Of a stretch of 64,000 nucleotides of DNA, positions 3,138-10,262 are shown piece by piece (the first letter of the stretch is position 1; each line of letters starts with the position of its first letter). The stretch lies in the IMG/VR virus record IMGVR_UViG_3300020179_000005, positions 145,702 to 209,701 of that record. One strand, given 5' to 3'. The notes below the pieces were generated by a model that saw only the letters and a list, made by a program, of their open reading frames with translations, had not been told where the DNA came from and ran no database searches. Position numbers and translations under genes: made by a program.

Positions 3138-5780
3138 ATGAGCGCAATCAACCAAGCGGTGAAGGGCGAAATCCCGATCATCGCATTCCTGTCAGGAAAG
3201 TGGCGAATCCTGACCAACAATCCCAGGGCACACGAAAAGTCTGCTCTGGAACTGTTCAGGGATACCAAAGAGCCAATCCAAGTCCAGACACGGACTCCAC
3301 AAGGTAGGACAATTTCCAACTACCTGATGGAAATCCACAATGGAACCTGGATCTACCCTGCGTTGAGCAAGTTGAACAAAAGAGGATTCACATTCCGACT
3401 TGGTTCAATCTCAATCAGTGACCTAAAGCATGAAATCAAGTTGAAGAGGACCAATATCGACCTGTTGGTTGATGGATCCACTTTTGCTTGGGCAAATGCG
3501 ACCTATGCATTCTTCCTTTACATCGATGGAATGGATCGTGAGATCTTCAGCCTCGAGGCAATGGACATGATTGCACTGGATGCAAAGAAGACACCAAAGC
3601 GACTGCAAGAAGTTGGTCGTTCATGCCAGATGTACAAGTCTGGTAAGTTCGACGAACTGAGCTGCTTGATGTTGGTGGACCCCAGCAATGAAATCCCAGA
3701 AGCTGAACATGATCACGGACCGGGTAACTGGCCTGCTGCTCGTGAAGAAGTCACCCTGGAGATGAGCCCTGATGGCAATAATTGCAATCCGTACGACGGA
3801 CCAATCATTGTCAGTCAGAGCTTCTTGCGGGAGATGTGCTACAAGATGGAAGAAGGTCATGAAAAGCGCCGTATGATTGCAATGATCATGGGCAACAAGA
3901 TTGACCGGTTCATCTTCCGACTGAGGACTCCGTACGGACTCGTAAAGGGTTTGGGTTTGTGCAGGCCTGACAGGGTGATGTCTCATGATGTCATCTTCCA
4001 CAGCAGTGCAATCAAGCCGGAGTTCCATTCGGATGGCAACAACTATCTGGCAACGGCGTTCATTCACGAGAACATCCACACGGCGATGTGGGACATGCAG
4101 AGCACGTTCCACAATCACGATTGGTTGTTCACCGAAGAGCGTTTCGTTCAGGACTCAGAGTCATTGGTGGATGACATCACCAAATCGTTCGCAGACAACA
4201 AAGTGCCGGACTTCATCTTGCACCAAGTAAAGTTTGCTCATGACGAAGCTGGTGTGCACCACGAAGAACCTGTAGTGGCTGGTTGGAAGACCGCTGTTGT
4301 CAGGTGGCTTGAGGCAGGGAATGATCTGTCTGCTTCTGCTTGCTTTAACAGGCTGGCGATTGGTTCTGTAGAAATGCAGATGCAATCAGCACGAGACAAC
4401 AACCGTTGGTGGCTGCCAATGAGCAATGCATTCATGGCAACCGTCAACACCTATGCTGCCTTGGAGCACATGGCGATGATGGACCTTCCGGAAGAGAAGC
4501 GCAATTGTGTCTTCTATCTGGAGAATGTTGGTGTGGTAATTCCCACCGACAGGTTCGTTGATACCGCTGTGTTGCATGACACATGGGATCAAGACGGTGA
4601 TCAAGCCAAGTTCATCTGGATCAAAATCTGGTGCAGCCAGTATGGTCGAGAGAAACTGGAGAAGCTGTATTCGGACTCGGTACTGCCAGTCAACATGATT
4701 GTGCCAGAGACACCGGAGGAAGCCATCGACGTCTGCGTAGTGATTCGTTCACCAAACGGACCAGGTGGGTACAGCATTGAGTGGTTTGATGCAGAGACCA
4801 TGCCATGGCACAGGCGTAATGACGAGCGGGTTCCGGTCATCGACTTGAACACTGCTCCATTCGGCATGTCGACTTTGCTGGAGACCTCTGAGCGAGGAGA
4901 GATTCCTCATTCAGTGGAGTACACCAGCAGGATGATCACACGAGACAACGTCAAACGGATGATCAGGGCACAGTTGGTAAATCCCAACGTAGGTACGTAT
5001 GCCAACTTGATCATGGCTTACTCTGCAATCATGGGAGTGAGCTATCCTGAGTGGCTGCCGGCAAACAGCAACGATGTGATCGACACCAATCAACAGGAGG
5101 CGGACATCGATTCCTTCCTCTACCTGAAGTTTGGAATGTTGCACATGCAAAAGTTGATCGTGAATGAAATCATTCGCGAACAGGTGCCTGTTGACAAGTT
5201 CGTGTTCAAGACACGTCTGTCGATTGGCATGGACGAAACAGATCAGGACATGCTTGAGGACATTCTGGTGGATGGCAAATTCACCCGTATGGACAATGTG
5301 AACAAGCACACCCTGGATCAAGTCAAGAAGATGATCGTTGAAGTTTCATTCGGTCGTCGTCTGGAATCTGAAACTCGTCAGTTGGTCATGGACAAATTGT
5401 CGATAGTCAAGCCGGAACACGTCGAATGGGCAAGTGGACTCTTCAAGGAGTTCGATGTGCGCCTCAAGCGTGCAGATGCAAAGTACCACTCCTCAGTGGC
5501 CAAGGCCGGTAAACTCGGGTTCAACAGCAAGTATCTCAAGATGTTTGCCGAAACCGAGCGCAGCAGGGAAATTGGCGATATTCAATCGGACCTGTACAAC
5601 AGGATCAATTCACACACAGCACCAGAAAAGTGGGCTGTACTGCTGTACCGGTACATCGTGGATCCGAGCCTGAACTCTGGCAAGTACGGTCTCAGTGACC
5701 GGATCATCTTCCAGAATGGCCAGGAAGGACAACCCACGGTCATGGACCTGTTGATCCAAGGTTTGGCTGACCTCAAGTAA
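3138..5780 (+). CDS. single-subunit two-barrel RNA polymerase candidate (YonO / cellular RdRP-like), paralog A
   Basis: YDGPIIVS (DG.g.iS motif), RLRTPYGLVKG (R...G.KG), WDQDGDQ (DxDGD, nt 4587-4601), VVIRSPNG, NVGTYAN, and NDVID appear in the order expected of cRdRP-like polymerases, except that RSP follows DxDGD. Collinear similarity to 14473-17058. Confidence 0.75.
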   Translation: MSAINQAVKGEIPIIAFLSGKWRILTNNPRAHEKSALELFRDTKEPIQVQTRTPQGRTISNYLMEIHNGTWIYPALSKLNKRGFTFRLGSISISDLKHEIKLKRTNIDLLVDGSTFAWANATYAFFLYIDGMDREIFSLEAMDMIALDAKKTPKRLQEVGRSCQMYKSGKFDELSCLMLVDPSNEIPEAEHDHGPGNWPAAREEVTLEMSPDGNNCNPYDGPIIVSQSFLREMCYKMEEGHEKRRMIAMIMGNKIDRFIFRLRTPYGLVKGLGLCRPDRVMSHDVIFHSSAIKPEFHSDGNNYLATAFIHENIHTAMWDMQSTFHNHDWLFTEERFVQDSESLVDDITKSFADNKVPDFILHQVKFAHDEAGVHHEEPVVAGWKTAVVRWLEAGNDLSASACFNRLAIGSVEMQMQSARDNNRWWLPMSNAFMATVNTYAALEHMAMMDLPEEKRNCVFYLENVGVVIPTDRFVDTAVLHDTWDQDGDQAKFIWIKIWCSQYGREKLEKLYSDSVLPVNMIVPETPEEAIDVCVVIRSPNGPGGYSIEWFDAETMPWHRRNDERVPVIDLNTAPFGMSTLLETSERGEIPHSVEYTSRMITRDNVKRMIRAQLVNPNVGTYANLIMAYSAIMGVSYPEWLPANSNDVIDTNQQEADIDSFLYLKFGMLHMQKLIVNEIIREQVPVDKFVFKTRLSIGMDETDQDMLEDILVDGKFTRMDNVNKHTLDQVKKMIVEVSFGRRLESETRQLVMDKLSIVKPEHVEWASGLFKEFDVRLKRADAKYHSSVAKAGKLGFNSKYLKMFAETERSREIGDIQSDLYNRINSHTAPEKWAVLLYRYIVDPSLNSGKYGLSDRIIFQNGQEGQPTVMDLLIQGLADLK

Positions 5781-6038: not shown

Positions 6039-6551
6039 ATGAAGCAGATACTGAAGGCGCTCTACGCCAACAATGATTGGCAGGAGCGAGTGAACACCGA
6101 GACGGGCAAGCGATTCTGGCAGGTGCTAGTTGGGCCTGTTGGCTTTGATGCCGTTTCGGCGGAAGACCGTCAGGTCAACGCGTACAACTGGGCAATCAAC
6201 GAAGATGACCAGTTGACCGTGGAAGTGGACGGTGCCAAGCACTCAGTGAACCTGAAGTCCTATGTGGACGAAGTGGTTCGCAGTGCGACTGGTGGAATCA
6301 ACCCGAAGGGTGTGTTGCGCGTCTTGTGCGACGACATCGTGCTGGGGAAGGCCACCGAGTTGACCTACAAGGATGGCAGCGTCCACCCGCAAATCACGGT
6401 GTACCCCGTGAACTTCGTGGTTGAGACCTACCAGCGGAGCAGGCCAGCAGCGGTGAAGATGGACAACGCAGCGTTCGCAGCGCTGAAGAGTCGGATGTCG
6501 CAGCCGACGCGGCCAGTGGTGGTCGCTGAGAGCAGTGACGCACCGTTCTGA
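6039..6551 (+). CDS. hypothetical protein ending in SSDAPF (SSB-like C-terminal tail)
   Basis: AAGGAG SD before ATG 6039; GC3-rich coding; followed by a terminator. Confidence 0.7.
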   Translation: MKQILKALYANNDWQERVNTETGKRFWQVLVGPVGFDAVSAEDRQVNAYNWAINEDDQLTVEVDGAKHSVNLKSYVDEVVRSATGGINPKGVLRVLCDDIVLGKATELTYKDGSVHPQITVYPVNFVVETYQRSRPAAVKMDNAAFAALKSRMSQPTRPVVVAESSDAPF

Positions 6552-6568
6552 CCGAACGGCGGAATGTG

Positions 6569-6598
6569 TTGGTGGGGGGGCTTCGGCCCCCCTGCCAA
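6569..6598 (+). terminator. GC-rich hairpin terminator
   Basis: GGGGGGC-TTCG-GCCCCCC within a longer stem. Confidence 0.7.
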
Positions 6599-6767
6599 TA
6601 AAAAATTGGTCTAGGTATATAGGTTCTTGCTATCCCTCCTTGGGGACACCCAGTCCGGCGGTGCTATGCACTTCTCACCGTCGGGCTGGGTCGTCTTTTC
6701 GTGTGGGTGCTTGAATGGTAATACAAAAAAAATAGGGGTAACATCCAAGTCAACAGTGGAGGGCATC

Positions 6768-6974
6768 ATGCCTAAGCAATCAGTGAATCCAGTAATTCCG
6801 TTTGAAGTAATGATTCCCAAGCGGGGAGATAGGTCTCAGGTGTTGGCGGAAATCGTCAGCATCGTCGAGAACGCACCTTCTTCCAAGTGGGACAAGTACC
6901 AAAGTGCAGAACAAGAGTTCCATCTCTTCAATGTGATGGCAGCTTCCTCAATCCCGGAGGACAATAACGTATAA
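6768..6974 (+). CDS. small hypothetical protein
   Basis: GGAGG SD before ATG 6768. Confidence 0.55.
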   Translation: MPKQSVNPVIPFEVMIPKRGDRSQVLAEIVSIVENAPSSKWDKYQSAEQEFHLFNVMAASSIPEDNNV

Positions 6975-6979
6975 GATGT

Positions 6980-7450
6980 TTCCCTGTACAACCGTAATCA
7001 CATGCAGGGTTATGCCATCGGGCGAAGAACCGATGTTAGCGGAGAATGGTTGGATTGTCCGGGTTTATTCTGTGTCGGCCCTTAAGTGGAAGTACGTACA
7101 GGATAGACGAAACTTATTGTGAACTGGGCTGGCCCGTCCCAAAGGATGTCGGAGTCTGTTGATATCTTCGGAGCAACAGACAGGGCGCTATTAATGGGAG
7201 ATTGATGTCCCGTGGATACATCAATGGTGTAATTGCAGCATCAGACAGCTCTTGCTGACATACCAAGTAGACAAAGTGCAGTAGTATGTCACAGAATTAA
7301 AAGTGGGGAAGGCGTTCGCAACTCCCCATGGTTATGGGACTGGCTTAAATGCCGGGCCATTGACGGGTTTCGGTTCAACCGAGTAATGTCCCATCTGGCT
7401 GACCCACCTACGGCGAACCTAGTGGGTGGGGCGCAAGCCCTGCCCACTCG
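6980..7450 (+). ncRNA. candidate large structured non-coding RNA (~470 nt), family unknown
   Basis: At least nine adjacent stems, including a cUUCGg loop (7166-7171) and a GCAA tetraloop (7433-7436). No credible ORF with an RBS. Strand is assumed from the tetraloops and the flanking genes. Confidence 0.65.
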
Positions 7451-7525
7451 ATAATAATATATAAAAAAATTTTTTATTAGCTTATAATTCTAAAAATTTA
7501 CACTAGAAAAATAGGGGGGTGTTTC

Positions 7526-7747
7526 ATGACGCAAGAATGGACAGATTTGGTGCCCAAGTGCACCATACACAATGTTCCGATGAGAGTAAAACAACTGACA
7601 CTCACTGAAGAACGCGAAGTTCGTGATTGTGACCTGATCATTGACGACACGCGCAAACACTGGGTTTGTGATTCGTGCCGCATTGTTTGGGTTTCCATCA
7701 TTGAGAACAACGAGATGAATGTACTTGGTATTCCAAGGTCGCACTAA
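7526..7747 (+). CDS. small Cys-containing hypothetical protein
   Basis: AGGGGGGT SD; C-x2-H and C-x2-C pairs. Confidence 0.6.
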   Translation: MTQEWTDLVPKCTIHNVPMRVKQLTLTEEREVRDCDLIIDDTRKHWVCDSCRIVWVSIIENNEMNVLGIPRSH

Positions 7748-9224: not shown

Positions 9225-10262
9225 ATGTCCACACTAAGCAACAAGTTCGGTATCAAGAGCGACACATTCGCTGTTGTCACCGAGAACCCCGATGCGCTCA
9301 AGTCCCAGAGTTCAACCGTCAAGTTGATCAAGGACAAGCGCGTCAAGATCAAGGGTTCCATCAACGGCAATGCCATTGACACCTATGCGACTCTGGAGTC
9401 CGCATTCTGGACTCGTCTGACGGTTCGTGACCACGAAGTCCGCCGCCAGAACGCAGAGCCCCGTATCAGCCAAGTCTTTGGTGGCGTGTTCAAGCCAGTC
9501 AAGTTGAAGGTTGAAGTCGAACTCGGCGGTCAGGTAATGACGCTGAGTGAGTTGATCGAGACCCTCATTCTTGAGAGCGCCAAGGGCAAGAGCCTTGATG
9601 ACGTGCGTAAGATCCTCAACGACACCAACCTGATCAAGGGCCTCAGCGACGGTATGCCACTGATGTTCCAACAGATGGGTGCCAGCCAGAACGGTTTCGC
9701 CCACGCGGTGGAAATCTTCAAGGCGGCAGGTGGTATTGACGATCTGGCAACGCTGCACAAGAATCCGCGTTTCCACACCTGCTATGACATGAAAGCCAAT
9801 CAGGGTCTGGAAGTGGTTGCCTTCGAGTTGGGTTCAGCCGACCGCAAGCAATCCACCACTGGTCAGGGTTTCATTGACATCGTTGACGCGGTGTTCAGCA
9901 ACCTCGTGCGTGTCATTGAACACAAGACCGCAGCGAGCATCCTGTCCAAGCAGATTCAGGAGAAGGCAGCCGAGATGTCCCAAGGGGATGTCAAACTGCA
10001 CGAAGCCAAGATCAAGAACGAACTTGACATGAGCCGTCAGTACCCAGTGATCTGGTCTGGTGCTTCTCGTCAGGTTGATGTGCAAGCCAATGGTGAGAAA
10101 GTTACCAGAGACAAGTACAACGCAACCAACGCACCGTGTGGTCGTTGGACGGTTGTGACTGCCAATGGTAACGTGGATCTGGATGTCTGGTCTAACTCGA
10201 CCAACAAGCCAGCCAACGCACCTGTCGCAGTACAGGTTGACACCACAGTTGCACCGTTCTAA
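9225..10262 (+). CDS. hypothetical protein ending in TTVAPF
   Basis: 345-aa ORF with strongly biased codons, followed by a long hairpin. Confidence 0.8.
   Translation: MSTLSNKFGIKSDTFAVVTENPDALKSQSSTVKLIKDKRVKIKGSINGNAIDTYATLESAFWTRLTVRDHEVRRQNAEPRISQVFGGVFKPVKLKVEVELGGQVMTLSELIETLILESAKGKSLDDVRKILNDTNLIKGLSDGMPLMFQQMGASQNGFAHAVEIFKAAGGIDDLATLHKNPRFHTCYDMKANQGLEVVAFELGSADRKQSTTGQGFIDIVDAVFSNLVRVIEHKTAASILSKQIQEKAAEMSQGDVKLHEAKIKNELDMSRQYPVIWSGASRQVDVQANGEKVTRDKYNATNAPCGRWTVVTANGNVDLDVWSNSTNKPANAPVAVQVDTTVAPF

What the first reader, a model, noticed from the sequence alone, without database searches (positions are those of the whole stretch)
6980..7450. ~470-nt densely base-paired non-coding segment: possible new large phage ncRNA
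Seen, stems: CCCTGTA/TGCAGGG (6982/7003); CATCGG/CCGATG (7016/7030); GTCTGTTG/CAACAGAC (7154/7174) capped by cUUCGg; ATTGATGT/ACATCAAT (7201/7218); TGACATAC/GTATGTCA (7256/7284); TGGGGA/TCCCCA (7304/7323); ATGGGAC/GTCCCAT (7334/7388) enclosing a further hairpin; ACCCAC/GTGGGT (7402/7422), which competes with AGTGGGT/GCCCACT; and GGGC-GCAA-GCCC. I could not see the hallmarks of tRNA, tmRNA, RNase P, or group I or II introns. Known: large structured RNAs such as GOLLD and ROOL occur in phages. Inference: a functional early-expressed RNA.
Basis: partly seen in the sequence, partly recalled or inferred. Interest (0 to 1): 0.8.

Follow-up and report, generated by a model that had tools for sequence, protein, structure and literature searches.

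The report
Tandem-pseudoknot RNA in a jumbo phage
The flagged stretch is a real, evolutionarily conserved folded RNA built around two back-to-back pseudoknots; it belongs to an uncatalogued family found at the same genomic spot in many freshwater giant phages, and what it does is still unknown.

Summary
Folding energy alone is weak support: z is -2.0 overall, -1.3 for the conserved part and -3.1 for the 3' third.

Comparative evidence is decisive. Strain variants and related lake-phage contigs keep the helices through compensatory changes. In the window family 96.6% of cells pair, and 14 cells changed on both sides against 4.0 in shuffles. There are 38 G-U cells against 1 A-C, which fixes the + strand as the RNA strand.

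The conserved core is 6975-7291.
- **Module B:** P1, whose loop pairs with 7118-7122. This pseudoknot is confirmed by a full strand swap in relative L222.
- **Module A:** a second H-type pseudoknot at 7126-7186 with an almost invariant loop.
- **P9:** a terminal hairpin.

P2-P4, P7 and P8 are insertions. The segment 7292-7455 is present in only two of the sequence variants recovered.

The same B+A tandem pseudoknot, with strong covariation, lies at the syntenic site in many jumbo-phage contigs. Rfam 15 has no match.

Function is inferred only. My best guess is an autonomous RNA module inside the small-gene transcripts that is read by a protein. A stable trans-acting RNA, a riboswitch and a link to the phage polymerase remain open. 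No RNA run was listed.

The parts
6729..6738 (+). AAAATAGGGG motif, a candidate phage-specific promoter or start signal of the unit that holds the 68-aa ORF and the RNA.
   Evidence: 8 copies in the window, all on the + strand, against 0.19 expected. At least 4 lie 30-80 nt upstream of a start codon, so the motif is not simply an RBS. Analogous recurring motifs flank the RNA in relatives.
6768..6974 (+). 68-aa ORF directly upstream. Its stop codon is at 6972-6974.
   Evidence: In L056 a 109-aa gene sits between this ORF and the RNA, and the RNA still starts at the same GATGTTTCCCTG.
6975..7291 (+). Conserved RNA core: expanded module B, module A, and hairpins P8, P8b and P9.
   Evidence: Alignments A2-A4. 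Pair counts. Strand test.
6982..7009 (+). P1 (6982-88 with 7003-09), the first stem of module B. Its 14-nt loop is invariant.
   Evidence: Pair 6 occurs as U-G, A-U, U-A and C-G in different variants. L222 has a different 9-bp stem at the same place.
6998..7122 (+). Long-range pseudoknot stem of module B: UCACA (6998-7002, in the P1 loop) pairs with UGUGA (7118-7122), directly before ACUGGG.
   Evidence: Invariant within the window family. In L222 it is UCGUGA with UCACGA at the equivalent places, a complete double-strand swap. The topology is the same as module B of the relatives, and a UAAUC junction is shared.
7016..7110 (+). P2 (7016-21/7030-35), P3 (7039-43/7058-62) and P4 (7063-7110): hairpins inserted in loop 3 of module B.
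   Evidence: L054 has two compensated pairs in P2 and a shorter, different P4. The P3 outer pair is G-C in L056 and A-U in L054. The relatives have only 8 nt here. L222 has two other hairpins here.
7123..7186 (+). Module A, an H-type pseudoknot. S1 is 7126-29 with 7136-39. S2 is 7132-35 with 7183-86. The loop CAAAGGAUGUCGGA (7140-7153) is nearly invariant.
   Evidence: A relatives-only nhmmer profile hits the window only at 7119-7155 (+), E=0.008. S1 shows co-changes at 7129 and 7137. In relatives S2 is 7-8 bp with many compensatory changes. Metagenome contig depth peaks here at 2-5 times the flanks.
7154..7181 (+). P7 hairpin (7154-61 with 7174-81), inserted in loop 3 of module A.
   Evidence: Pair 1 is G-C, G-U or A-U. 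Pair 3 is C-G or G-C. Pair 6 is U-A or U-G. L187 and L222 carry unrelated stem sequences here. Most relatives lack it.
7201..7255 (+). P8 (7201-08 with 7218-25) and P8b (7238-40/7253-55 and 7243-45/7250-52).
   Evidence: P8 shows no covariation; its loop-closing pair is lost in L011. One P8b pair occurs as A-U, G-C and G-U. L187 and L222 lack this segment.
7256..7291 (+). P9, the terminal hairpin (7256-63 with 7284-91).
   Evidence: A-U to G-C and G-C to G-U changes. It resembles the terminal hairpin of module Y in relatives; this rests on reading the sequences and was not tested statistically.
7292..7455 (+). 3' extension found in only some variants. It holds hairpins at 7304-28 and 7334-94 and a GC-rich hairpin at 7421-48.
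   Evidence: Present only in the window type and L007 type; absent in L011, L041 and L056. MFE z = -3.06. There is no variation to test covariation. No U-tract follows the last hairpin, and the terminator scan did not call it.
7456..7525 (+). AT-rich spacer with an A7T6 tract, then a second AAAATAGGGG motif (7508-17) in front of the 73-aa ORF (7526-7747).
   Evidence: This spacer is conserved in all variants that reach it.

Best explanation
Window 6975-7291 (+ strand) encodes a conserved, pseudoknotted RNA element. It is an expanded member of a family not in Rfam 15 that I call B-A.

The family is two consecutive H-type pseudoknots. Their stems vary freely. Their loops are almost invariant: UAAUC in loop 1 of B, ACUGG between the knots, and CAAnGGAUGUCGGA in loop 3 of A.

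In this phage, hairpins P2-P4 and P7 are inserted in the loop-3 regions. P8 to P9 follow, and two of the sequence variants recovered add a 160-nt extension.

Shown:
- the structure;
- the RNA strand;
- the boundaries;
- family membership of module A;
- conserved synteny, between a large polymerase-like gene plus a ~170-aa gene on one side and a ~345-aa gene on the other, amid small ORFs.

Inferred:
- It is made as part of the rightward small-gene transcripts. It starts one base after the upstream stop codon whatever that gene is. In relatives it lies either just after or just before the recurring promoter-like motif.
- It works as an autonomous RNA module whose invariant loops are read by a protein (phage or host) to set the stability, processing or translation of the transcript that carries it.

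My probabilities:
- Selected RNA structure on the + strand: about 0.93.
- Protein-read cis module: about 0.35-0.4.
For: **Covariation in the window family** (A4):
- 79 pairs, 96.6% of cells paired.
- 6 pairs and 14 cells changed on both sides, against 3.0 and 4.0 in shuffles (4/500 and 0/500 shuffles reach these values).
- Slid controls give 0-1 such pairs.

**Long-range pseudoknot:** confirmed by a full swap in L222.

**Strand:** 38 G-U cells against 1 A-C cell.

**Relatives, B+A** (A10):
- 96% of cells paired.
- 10 of 21 pairs changed on both sides (0/500 shuffles).
- Covariation score 0.323 against 0.109.
- The two stems that were left out of the model also covary.

**Homology of module A:** the only nhmmer hit in the window, E=0.008.

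**Not coding:** in L011 the ORF at 6976-7122 gains a TGA at codon 4 and a 1-nt indel.

**Autonomy:** the RNA has the same start after either a 68-aa or a 109-aa gene, and the order of the RNA and the 109-aa gene differs between L056 and L180.

**Synteny:**

**Position relative to the recurring motif:**

**Population data:** module A is the most widely shared piece among lake contigs.
Against: - There is no transcript evidence; no RNA run was listed.
- Folding energy of the conserved core is not better than shuffles (z = -1.32).
- The covariance model of B+A built from relatives does not hit the window at E<=1. The expanded loop 3 breaks it, so whole-element homology rests on module A, topology, the UAAUC junction and synteny.
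- The window family has few independent sequences, and several are partial.
- Flanking genes differ between relatives, so no regulated gene can be named.
- No binding protein is identified.
- The promoter reading of AAAATAGGGG is itself an inference.
Confidence: 0.6

Rival explanations
1. It is a stand-alone, stable trans-acting non-coding RNA. It would be cut out of, or terminated from, the small-ORF transcript and act on a host or phage protein or RNA, for example as a sponge.
For: - Loops are invariant and the folding is compact.
- The element is kept while neighbours change and it moves relative to genes.
- In the window a GC-rich hairpin ends it, and the next gene has its own AAAATAGGGG motif.
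- The loop ANGGAUGU resembles the CsrA/RsmA binding consensus. This is from my memory of the SELEX consensus and is a lead only.
Against: - No promoter-like motif lies directly in front of it in the window.
- Most relatives have no terminator after it and run into the next RBS within 20-45 nt.
- GGA is not enriched: 11 against 9.7 expected.
- The second GGA of the loop is not conserved.
- There is no expression data.
Confidence: 0.22
2. It is a riboswitch-like sensor. One or both pseudoknots would bind a small molecule and control the downstream cistron.
For: - Compact H-type pseudoknots with invariant loop nucleotides and free stems are typical of small aptamers; this is general knowledge of the preQ1, SAM-II and guanidine-III classes.
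- In L187, L031, L190 and L222 module A ends 25-60 nt before the next gene or motif.
Against: - No match to any Rfam riboswitch.
- Downstream genes are unrelated small ORFs.
- No conserved expression platform is seen.
- In several phages a promoter-like motif separates the RNA from the next gene.
Confidence: 0.12
3. It is functionally tied to the phage's own polymerase, the 880-aa protein 1.2 kb upstream. It could be a terminator or insulator, an antiterminator or regulator bound by the enzyme, or a template.
For: - The arrangement of polymerase-like gene, ~170-aa gene, small ORFs and RNA is conserved in many contigs.
- The protein's nearest ESM Atlas look-alikes are cellular-type RdRPs, and it has an invariant DQDGD.
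- The RNA always abuts the recurring promoter-like motif.
Against: - The polymerase assignment is unconfirmed: no Pfam hit, no PDB sequence hit, a poor AF2 model, and no significant Foldseek match.
- Synteny may simply reflect a conserved genome layout.
- The window holds only one such RNA but 8 motif copies, so it is not a general terminator.
Confidence: 0.08
4. One of the modules is a self-cleaving ribozyme that processes the polycistronic RNA.
For: - The pseudoknot-rich, loop-conserved small modules lie between cistrons.
- From general knowledge, many small ribozymes occur in phage intergenic regions.
Against: - No Rfam ribozyme match at E<=10.
- Module A has the P1/P2 crossing of HDV-like ribozymes but lacks any P3/L3 element between the arms (read).
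Confidence: 0.05
5. It is not an RNA element at all. It would be a decayed gene or spacer with chance hairpins, or a DNA-level signal such as an origin next to the AT-rich tract.
For: - MFE of the core is not better than shuffles.
- Six- and seven-bp hairpins are ordinary for this genome.
- An AT-rich tract follows.
- The region is variable between close strains, 87.6% identity against about 99.5% in the ORF next door.
Against: - Compensatory changes and G-U intermediates preserve the helices.
- The G-U versus A-C asymmetry (38 to 1) fits RNA of one strand, not duplex DNA.
- Pseudoknot arms covary.
- No protein similarity to the neighbouring 109-aa gene.
- The cumulative GC-skew curve shows no reversal in the stretch profiled.
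Confidence: 0.04

Closest known systems
Orphan large or complex phage-associated RNAs in Rfam (GOLLD, ROOL, HEARO and similar metagenome motifs)
   Same: Carried by phages or found in lake metagenomes. Complex fold supported by covariation. Function unknown.
   Different: No covariance-model match at any threshold used. This element is smaller: the core is about 200-320 nt. It is built from separable pseudoknot modules and sits between small cistrons.
Phage T4 gene 32 mRNA leader pseudoknot, a translational operator (general knowledge; mentioned in PMC10690425)
   Same: An H-type pseudoknot in a phage mRNA untranslated region that a protein reads to control expression.
   Different: That element is a single pseudoknot tied to one gene and its own product. 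Here there are two adjacent knots with invariant loops next to varying genes, and no binding protein is known.
Phage HK022 put RNAs, cis-acting antiterminator RNAs (from memory)
   Same: A cis-acting folded RNA in a phage operon whose action does not depend on the identity of downstream genes.
   Different: put RNAs are two stem-loops without pseudoknots and act on host RNA polymerase. Nothing of the kind was tested here.
Tandem pseudoknot arrays in RNA-virus UTRs (tobamovirus upstream pseudoknot domain, flavivirus xrRNA and dumbbell elements) and in tmRNA (from memory)
   Same: Strings of H-type pseudoknots that are gained, lost and expanded as modules between lineages.
   Different: Those occur in other genomes and hosts. 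There is no sequence or model match: Rfam and ARAGORN found no tmRNA. The resemblance is one of architecture only.
Catalogue of about 10,000 candidate structured RNAs from IMG/VR (PMC10690425)
   Same: Same data source and the same kind of object. Pieces of the relatives' modules could be among its 29-151-nt candidates.
   Different: I could not check this, because no supplementary files are held. Neither the tandem-pseudoknot architecture nor this locus came up in the passages of the main text returned by my keyword search.

Membership tests
B-A tandem-pseudoknot RNA of freshwater jumbo phages (defined here from relatives) | Module A: ACUGG, S1 (3-4 bp), S2 arm inside the S1 loop, loop CAAnGGAUGUCGGA, S2 closing arm. 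| tested here: met
   The relatives-only profile gives a single window hit at 7119-7155 (+), E=0.008. Both stems are present and keep pairing through change.
B-A tandem-pseudoknot RNA of freshwater jumbo phages (defined here from relatives) | Module B: a hairpin whose loop 3' end (after UAAUC) pairs with the bases directly before ACUGG. | tested here: met
   Window: UCACA with UGUGA. L222: UCGUGA with UCACGA at the same places. Relatives: CAUAGG/CCUAUG, CAUGGA/UCCAUG and CAUUGG/CCAAUG.
B-A tandem-pseudoknot RNA of freshwater jumbo phages (defined here from relatives) | Match to the covariance model of B+A built from relatives only. | tested here: not met
   R1 finds relatives at E from 1e-8 to 1e-26 and L190 at 0.04, but nothing in the window at E<=1. 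The 110-nt insertion in loop 3 of B is the likely reason.
B-A tandem-pseudoknot RNA of freshwater jumbo phages (defined here from relatives) | Syntenic position: large polymerase-like gene, ~170-aa gene, small ORFs, RNA, small ORFs, ~345-aa gene, all on one strand. | tested here: met
Any Rfam 15 family, including GOLLD, ROOL, HEARO, group I and II introns, RNase P, 6S, riboswitches and small ribozymes | Covariance-model score at or near the family threshold. | tested here: not met
   Only tRNAs elsewhere in the window reach the gathering threshold. The best hits in 6500-7600 have E of 8.6 and 9.4. Nothing was found on the relatives' RNAs.
tRNA or tmRNA | Cloverleaf, or tRNA-like domain plus tag reading frame. 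| tested here: not met
   ARAGORN finds 0 genes in 6500-7700.
Protein-coding gene or recent pseudogene | A reading frame kept among variants, or similarity to a protein. | tested here: not met
   All frames are broken. The 48-aa ORF at 6976 is destroyed in L011. There is no similarity to the 109-aa neighbour. No ORF is present in L222's copy.
Intrinsic (rho-independent) terminator, for hairpin 7421-7448 | GC-rich stem immediately followed by a U-tract. | tested here: not met
   The scan does not call it. The T-run starts about 23 nt after the stem.
CsrB/RsmZ-type protein sponge | Many GGA motifs displayed in hairpin loops. | tested here: not met
   11 GGA against 9.7 expected. One conserved ANGGAUGU remains as a lead.
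HDV-like ribozyme | Nested double pseudoknot with P3/L3 between the P2 5' arm and the P1 3' arm. | tested here: not met
   Between the two arms lie 0 nt in the window family and 1-3 nt in relatives. No Rfam hit.

The most novel reading that the evidence does not exclude
The tandem pseudoknots could be one of two things. They could be the RNA partner of the phage's own cellular-RdRP-like polymerase, acting as regulator, antiterminator, insulator or template. Or they could be a new aptamer or ribozyme class that giant freshwater phages carry as a portable module. Either way, this would be a new RNA-based control layer in jumbo-phage infection.
Probability: 0.15. Interest if true: 0.85.

Novelty: new variant of a known kind. 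Interest (0 to 1): 0.62.

Why it matters
Giant phages of lakes are almost unstudied, and most of their genes have no known relatives. This is a well-delimited RNA with a testable three-dimensional plan. It has two adjacent pseudoknots, invariant loops and tolerated insertion points. It recurs at one locus across many such phages and is the most widely shared piece of that locus in lake metagenomes.

It gives RNA biologists a compact new fold to probe for a ligand, a protein partner or catalysis. It gives phage biologists a marker for a conserved, probably early or middle, transcription region. That region lies next to a possible new single-subunit polymerase and its candidate promoter motif.

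If it turns out to be only a stability element, it is a modest addition to the catalogue of phage RNA motifs.

Tried and rejected
**Searches that found nothing**
- GenBank phage similarity, near and distant modes: none.
- Rfam at gathering and at E<=10: none.
- ARAGORN: none.
- RNA sequencing runs: none listed.
- Supplements of the IMG/VR structured-RNA catalogue: not held.

**Interpretations rejected**
- Stop-codon read-through or recoding of the 68-aa ORF. The in-frame extension has mixed stop codons. The frame is broken by a 1-nt indel in L011, and the RNA also follows a different gene in L056.
- The 48-aa ORF at 6976 as a gene.
- A pseudogene of the 109-aa neighbour.
- A P1-loop to P3-loop kissing interaction (CAACC with GGUUG): not kept in L054.
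- Pairing of the module A loop with the P9 arm or with the module Y loop: not conserved among relatives.
- A CsrA sponge.
- Sigma-70 promoters or intrinsic terminators at the borders.

**Attempts that failed**
- Confirming the polymerase call by Pfam, PDB sequence search, AF2 plus Foldseek, and homologue names. All were negative or uninformative.
- The covariance model R1 does not reach the window.
- MAFFT alignments of module A across subgroups put the stems in different columns. I therefore counted pairs only on A4 and on the model-fitted A10.

**Wasted scans**
- A 15-mer against genome contigs gave only chance hits.
- An 18-mer against viral-contig hit an unrelated coding gene.
- The P1 pattern found only the three known contigs.

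Full report
**Source and setting**

The window is part of a ~210-kb lake-water phage contig (IMGVR_UViG_3300020179_000005 = Ga0194134_10000025). Near-identical copies occur in many lake metagenomes. Nothing similar is in GenBank phages. Genes around the finding all run on the + strand:
- an 880-aa protein (3138-5780);
- a ~170-aa protein;
- a 68-aa ORF (6768-6974);
- the flagged gap;
- a 73-aa ORF (7526-7747);
- more small ORFs;
- a 345-aa protein (9225-10262).

None of the ten proteins tested in and near this block has a convincing Pfam or PHROG assignment; the closest is a PcfJ-like hit just above the Pfam cut-off on the 429-aa protein at 26-1315.

**Checking the observation**

One of them (6982/7003) includes a U-G wobble. 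The interval 6975-7525 is broken by TAA, TAG and TGA in all frames.

Taken on its own, the sequence is only moderately unusual:
- There are three perfect hairpins of 8 bp or more against 0.22 in shuffles (P=0.003). Shorter stems are ordinary for this genome.
- The folding-energy z-score is -2.0 on the + strand and -2.2 on the - strand.
- It is -1.3 for 6975-7292 and -3.1 for 7293-7455.

**Close variants**

Looking up contigs that encode the identical flanking small proteins, together with homologues of those proteins, gave several versions of the gap.
- **L007 type:** six substitutions.
- **L011 and L041 type:** 87.6% identical over 6975-7288, with a 15-nt insertion, and lacking 7289-7463.
- **L056:** a 109-aa gene lies between the 68-aa ORF and the element, which still begins at the same GATGTTTCCCTG.
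- **L180:** the element is followed by that 109-aa gene instead.
- **L054:** about 73% identical, partial.
- **L187:** the element ends near window 7189 and runs straight into the next gene.

The 48-aa ORF at 6976 acquires a TGA at codon 4 and a frameshift in L011, so it is not a gene. The 109-aa protein has no similarity to the gap.

**Covariation in the window family**

I counted a structure on alignment A4 that comprised P1, P2, P3, P4, the two stems of module A, P7, P8, P8b, P9 and the long-range pairing 6998-7002/7118-7122. The results were:
- 79 pairs, with 96.6% of cells forming standard pairs.
- 6 pairs and 14 cells with changes on both sides, against 3.0 and 4.0 in shuffles (4/500 and 0/500 shuffles reach these values).
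- Only 0-1 such pairs when partners are slid by 1-3 columns.

Examples:
- P1 pair 6 is U-G, A-U, U-A or C-G.
- P7 pair 1 runs G-C, G-U, A-U, and pair 3 flips from C-G to G-C.
- P9 has A-U to G-C.
- 7129 C>T and 7137 T>C occur together and keep both pairs of the short stem.

The same paired changes are visible as co-occurring variants in contigs of four lake metagenomes.

There are 38 G-U cells against 1 A-C cell. The helices therefore work on the + strand RNA, not on the complementary strand or in duplex DNA.

**The pseudoknots**

Related jumbo-phage contigs were found first by synteny and then by two motif scans. At the same locus they carry a ~90-nt unit of two consecutive H-type pseudoknots.
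- **Module B:** a 5-bp hairpin whose loop, after UAAUC, forms 6 bp with the bases just before ACUGG.
- **Module A:** a 3-4-bp stem, with a 7-8-bp second stem whose 5' arm lies in the first stem's loop, and a loop reading CAAnGGAUGUCGGA.

On a model-fitted alignment of 13 matches to the model (11 distinct sequences), 96% of cells pair. Ten of 21 pairs changed on both sides (0/500 shuffles). The covariation score is 0.323 against 0.109. The two stems that were deliberately left out of the model covary as well.

The window has module A at 7123-7186, with a shorter second stem (4 bp) and hairpin P7 inserted before the closing arm. A profile built from relatives alone hits the 128 kb of the window (both strands) once, at 7119-7155 on the + strand, E=0.008.

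The window's P1 has the topology of module B. Its loop ends in UAAUCACA, and UGUGA precedes ACUGGG. These bases never vary inside the window family. In L222, a contig whose large protein is 67% identical, they read UCGUGA and UCACGA at the equivalent positions. That is a complete compensatory swap.

So P2-P4 are hairpins inserted in loop 3 of module B. L222 has two other hairpins there, and the distant relatives have eight bases.

The covariance model of the compact B+A unit does not reach the window. I list that as a failed test. Membership rests on module A, the shared topology and junction, and synteny.

**What is and is not conserved**

- The core common to all window-family members, L187 and L222 included, is about 6982-7186.
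- P8, P8b and P9 are present in most.
- P9 looks like the terminal hairpin of a further module (Y) of the relatives.
- 7292-7455 is found in only two of the sequence variants recovered. It has no variation, so it cannot be tested by covariation, although it folds well.
- In metagenome contigs, depth over 7103-7195 is 2-5 times that of the flanks. Module A is therefore shared by many co-occurring relatives.
- The relatives also combine B-A with two other pseudoknotted modules (X and Y) in a fixed order but variable sets.

**Comparison with known families**

- Rfam 15 gives nothing at the gathering threshold. In 6500-7600 the best hits have E of 8.6 and 9.4, and there is nothing on the relatives.
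- ARAGORN finds no tRNA or tmRNA.
- The element is not an intrinsic terminator by the scan.
- GGA motifs are not enriched, so it is not a CsrB-like sponge.
- Module A shares the crossing of two helices with HDV-like ribozymes but has no P3/L3.
- A published IMG/VR catalogue of short candidate RNAs may contain fragments of the relatives' modules. I could not check this.

**How it probably works (inferred)**

The element starts one base after the upstream stop codon, whichever gene that is. It has no AAAATAGGGG motif of its own.

That 10-mer occurs 8 times in the window, all on the + strand, against 0.19 expected. It usually lies 30-80 nt before a start codon, so I read it as a phage promoter or start signal rather than an RBS.

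The RNA's position relative to the motif varies:
- In the window, L222, L180, L192 and the L005 group, the RNA lies just upstream of the next such motif.
- In L194 and L199, the corresponding motif lies about 10 nt upstream of the RNA.
- In many relatives, the RNA runs into the next RBS within 20-45 nt.

An RNA that keeps its boundaries while its neighbours and its position in the transcription unit change behaves as an autonomous module. Free stems with invariant loops suggest specific recognition.

My leading reading is a cis-carried module whose loops are bound by a protein to set the fate of the transcript (about 0.35-0.4). The alternatives are:
- a released stable ncRNA (about 0.22);
- a riboswitch (about 0.12);
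- a link to the phage polymerase (about 0.08);
- a ribozyme (about 0.05);
- no RNA function (about 0.04).

None of these has been tested by experiment, and no RNA run was listed.

**Side finding on the 880-aa protein**

Its nearest ESM Atlas look-alikes, by features (0.93-0.94) and by predicted structure (TM about 0.5), are cellular-type RNA-dependent RNA polymerases. It carries an invariant HDTWDQDGD in all homologues examined.

Pfam, PDB sequence search, an AF2 model (pLDDT 55) with Foldseek, and a large homologue search gave no confirmation. This is a lead, not a result. It does make the promoter reading of the recurring motif more plausible.

**Verdict**

This is a genuine new structured RNA, but it is a modular tandem-pseudoknot element with a ~200-320-nt conserved core rather than a uniform 470-nt RNA. 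Its expression and role remain to be shown.

Noticed in passing
window 5906, 5955, 6729, 7508, 7747, 8804, 9137, 13937 (+): The 10-mer AAAATAGGGG occurs 8 times, all on the + strand, against 0.19 expected, clustered just downstream of the 880-aa gene. Relatives have their own recurring equivalents: AAAAGGGGGG, often after ACTAGNACCCTAC; GGGAAAAGAAGGG in L194; GGAATAAGTCGG in L192. It is probably a phage promoter or start signal.
   Followed up: partly
window 3138-5780 (+): The 880-aa protein looks like a cellular-type RdRP, that is a two-barrel polymerase, in ESM Atlas. It has an invariant DQDGD at about aa 484-488. Pfam, PDB, AF2 plus Foldseek and homologue names gave no confirmation. Some homologues (L222) carry a fused NADAR domain.
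   Followed up: partly
window 6620-6700 (+); L005 13518-13590; L222 about 4195-4270: A second conserved non-coding element lies upstream of the 68-aa ORF. The motif CTTGCTATCCCTCCTTGG contains an anti-Shine-Dalgarno-like CCUCC(UU) complementary to the ORF's RBS. It is followed by a long hairpin whose arms differ but stay complementary in the window, L222 and L005.
   Followed up: partly
L005 14117-14396; L018 537-866; L192 7681-7850; and others: Relatives carry two further pseudoknotted modules after B-A, in a fixed order but variable combinations. Module X is a hairpin with loop AAUCAAC/AGUCAAC that pairs with a downstream GUUGAU, plus a CUCGG-type knot. Module Y has a GCUAU/AUAGC loop pairing, GGCCACUGGUACAAGGGCGACA and a terminal hairpin.
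   Followed up: partly
window 7526-7747; L011 about 7300-7480; L018 and L189 just upstream of the RNA: Small Cys-rich, zinc-ribbon-like proteins sit directly next to the RNA in the window and in several relatives. They are possible RNA-binding partners.
   Followed up: no
window 6039-6551 and 9225-10262; L005 homologues: Both conserved flanking proteins (~170 aa and ~345 aa) end in the same C-terminal (A/K)PF, seen as DAPF, VAPF and VKPF. This suggests a shared docking motif.
   Followed up: no
window 6571-6592: A strong GC hairpin (G-run, CTTCGG, C-run) lies right after the ~170-aa gene. It is followed by an A-run rather than a T-run. A similar hairpin stands at the same place in L222 and L005.
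   Followed up: no
L190 1480-1850 (- strand): An unrelated 17.7-kb viral contig has about 500 nt without ORFs ending in a module A copy. Its second stem is entirely different (UUACCUAU with AUAGGUAA). This is possibly another expanded version of the RNA.
   Followed up: no
window 11970, 22791, 23215, 25433, 26294, 26374, 52715 (+): Seven tRNA genes are scattered through the window.
   Followed up: no
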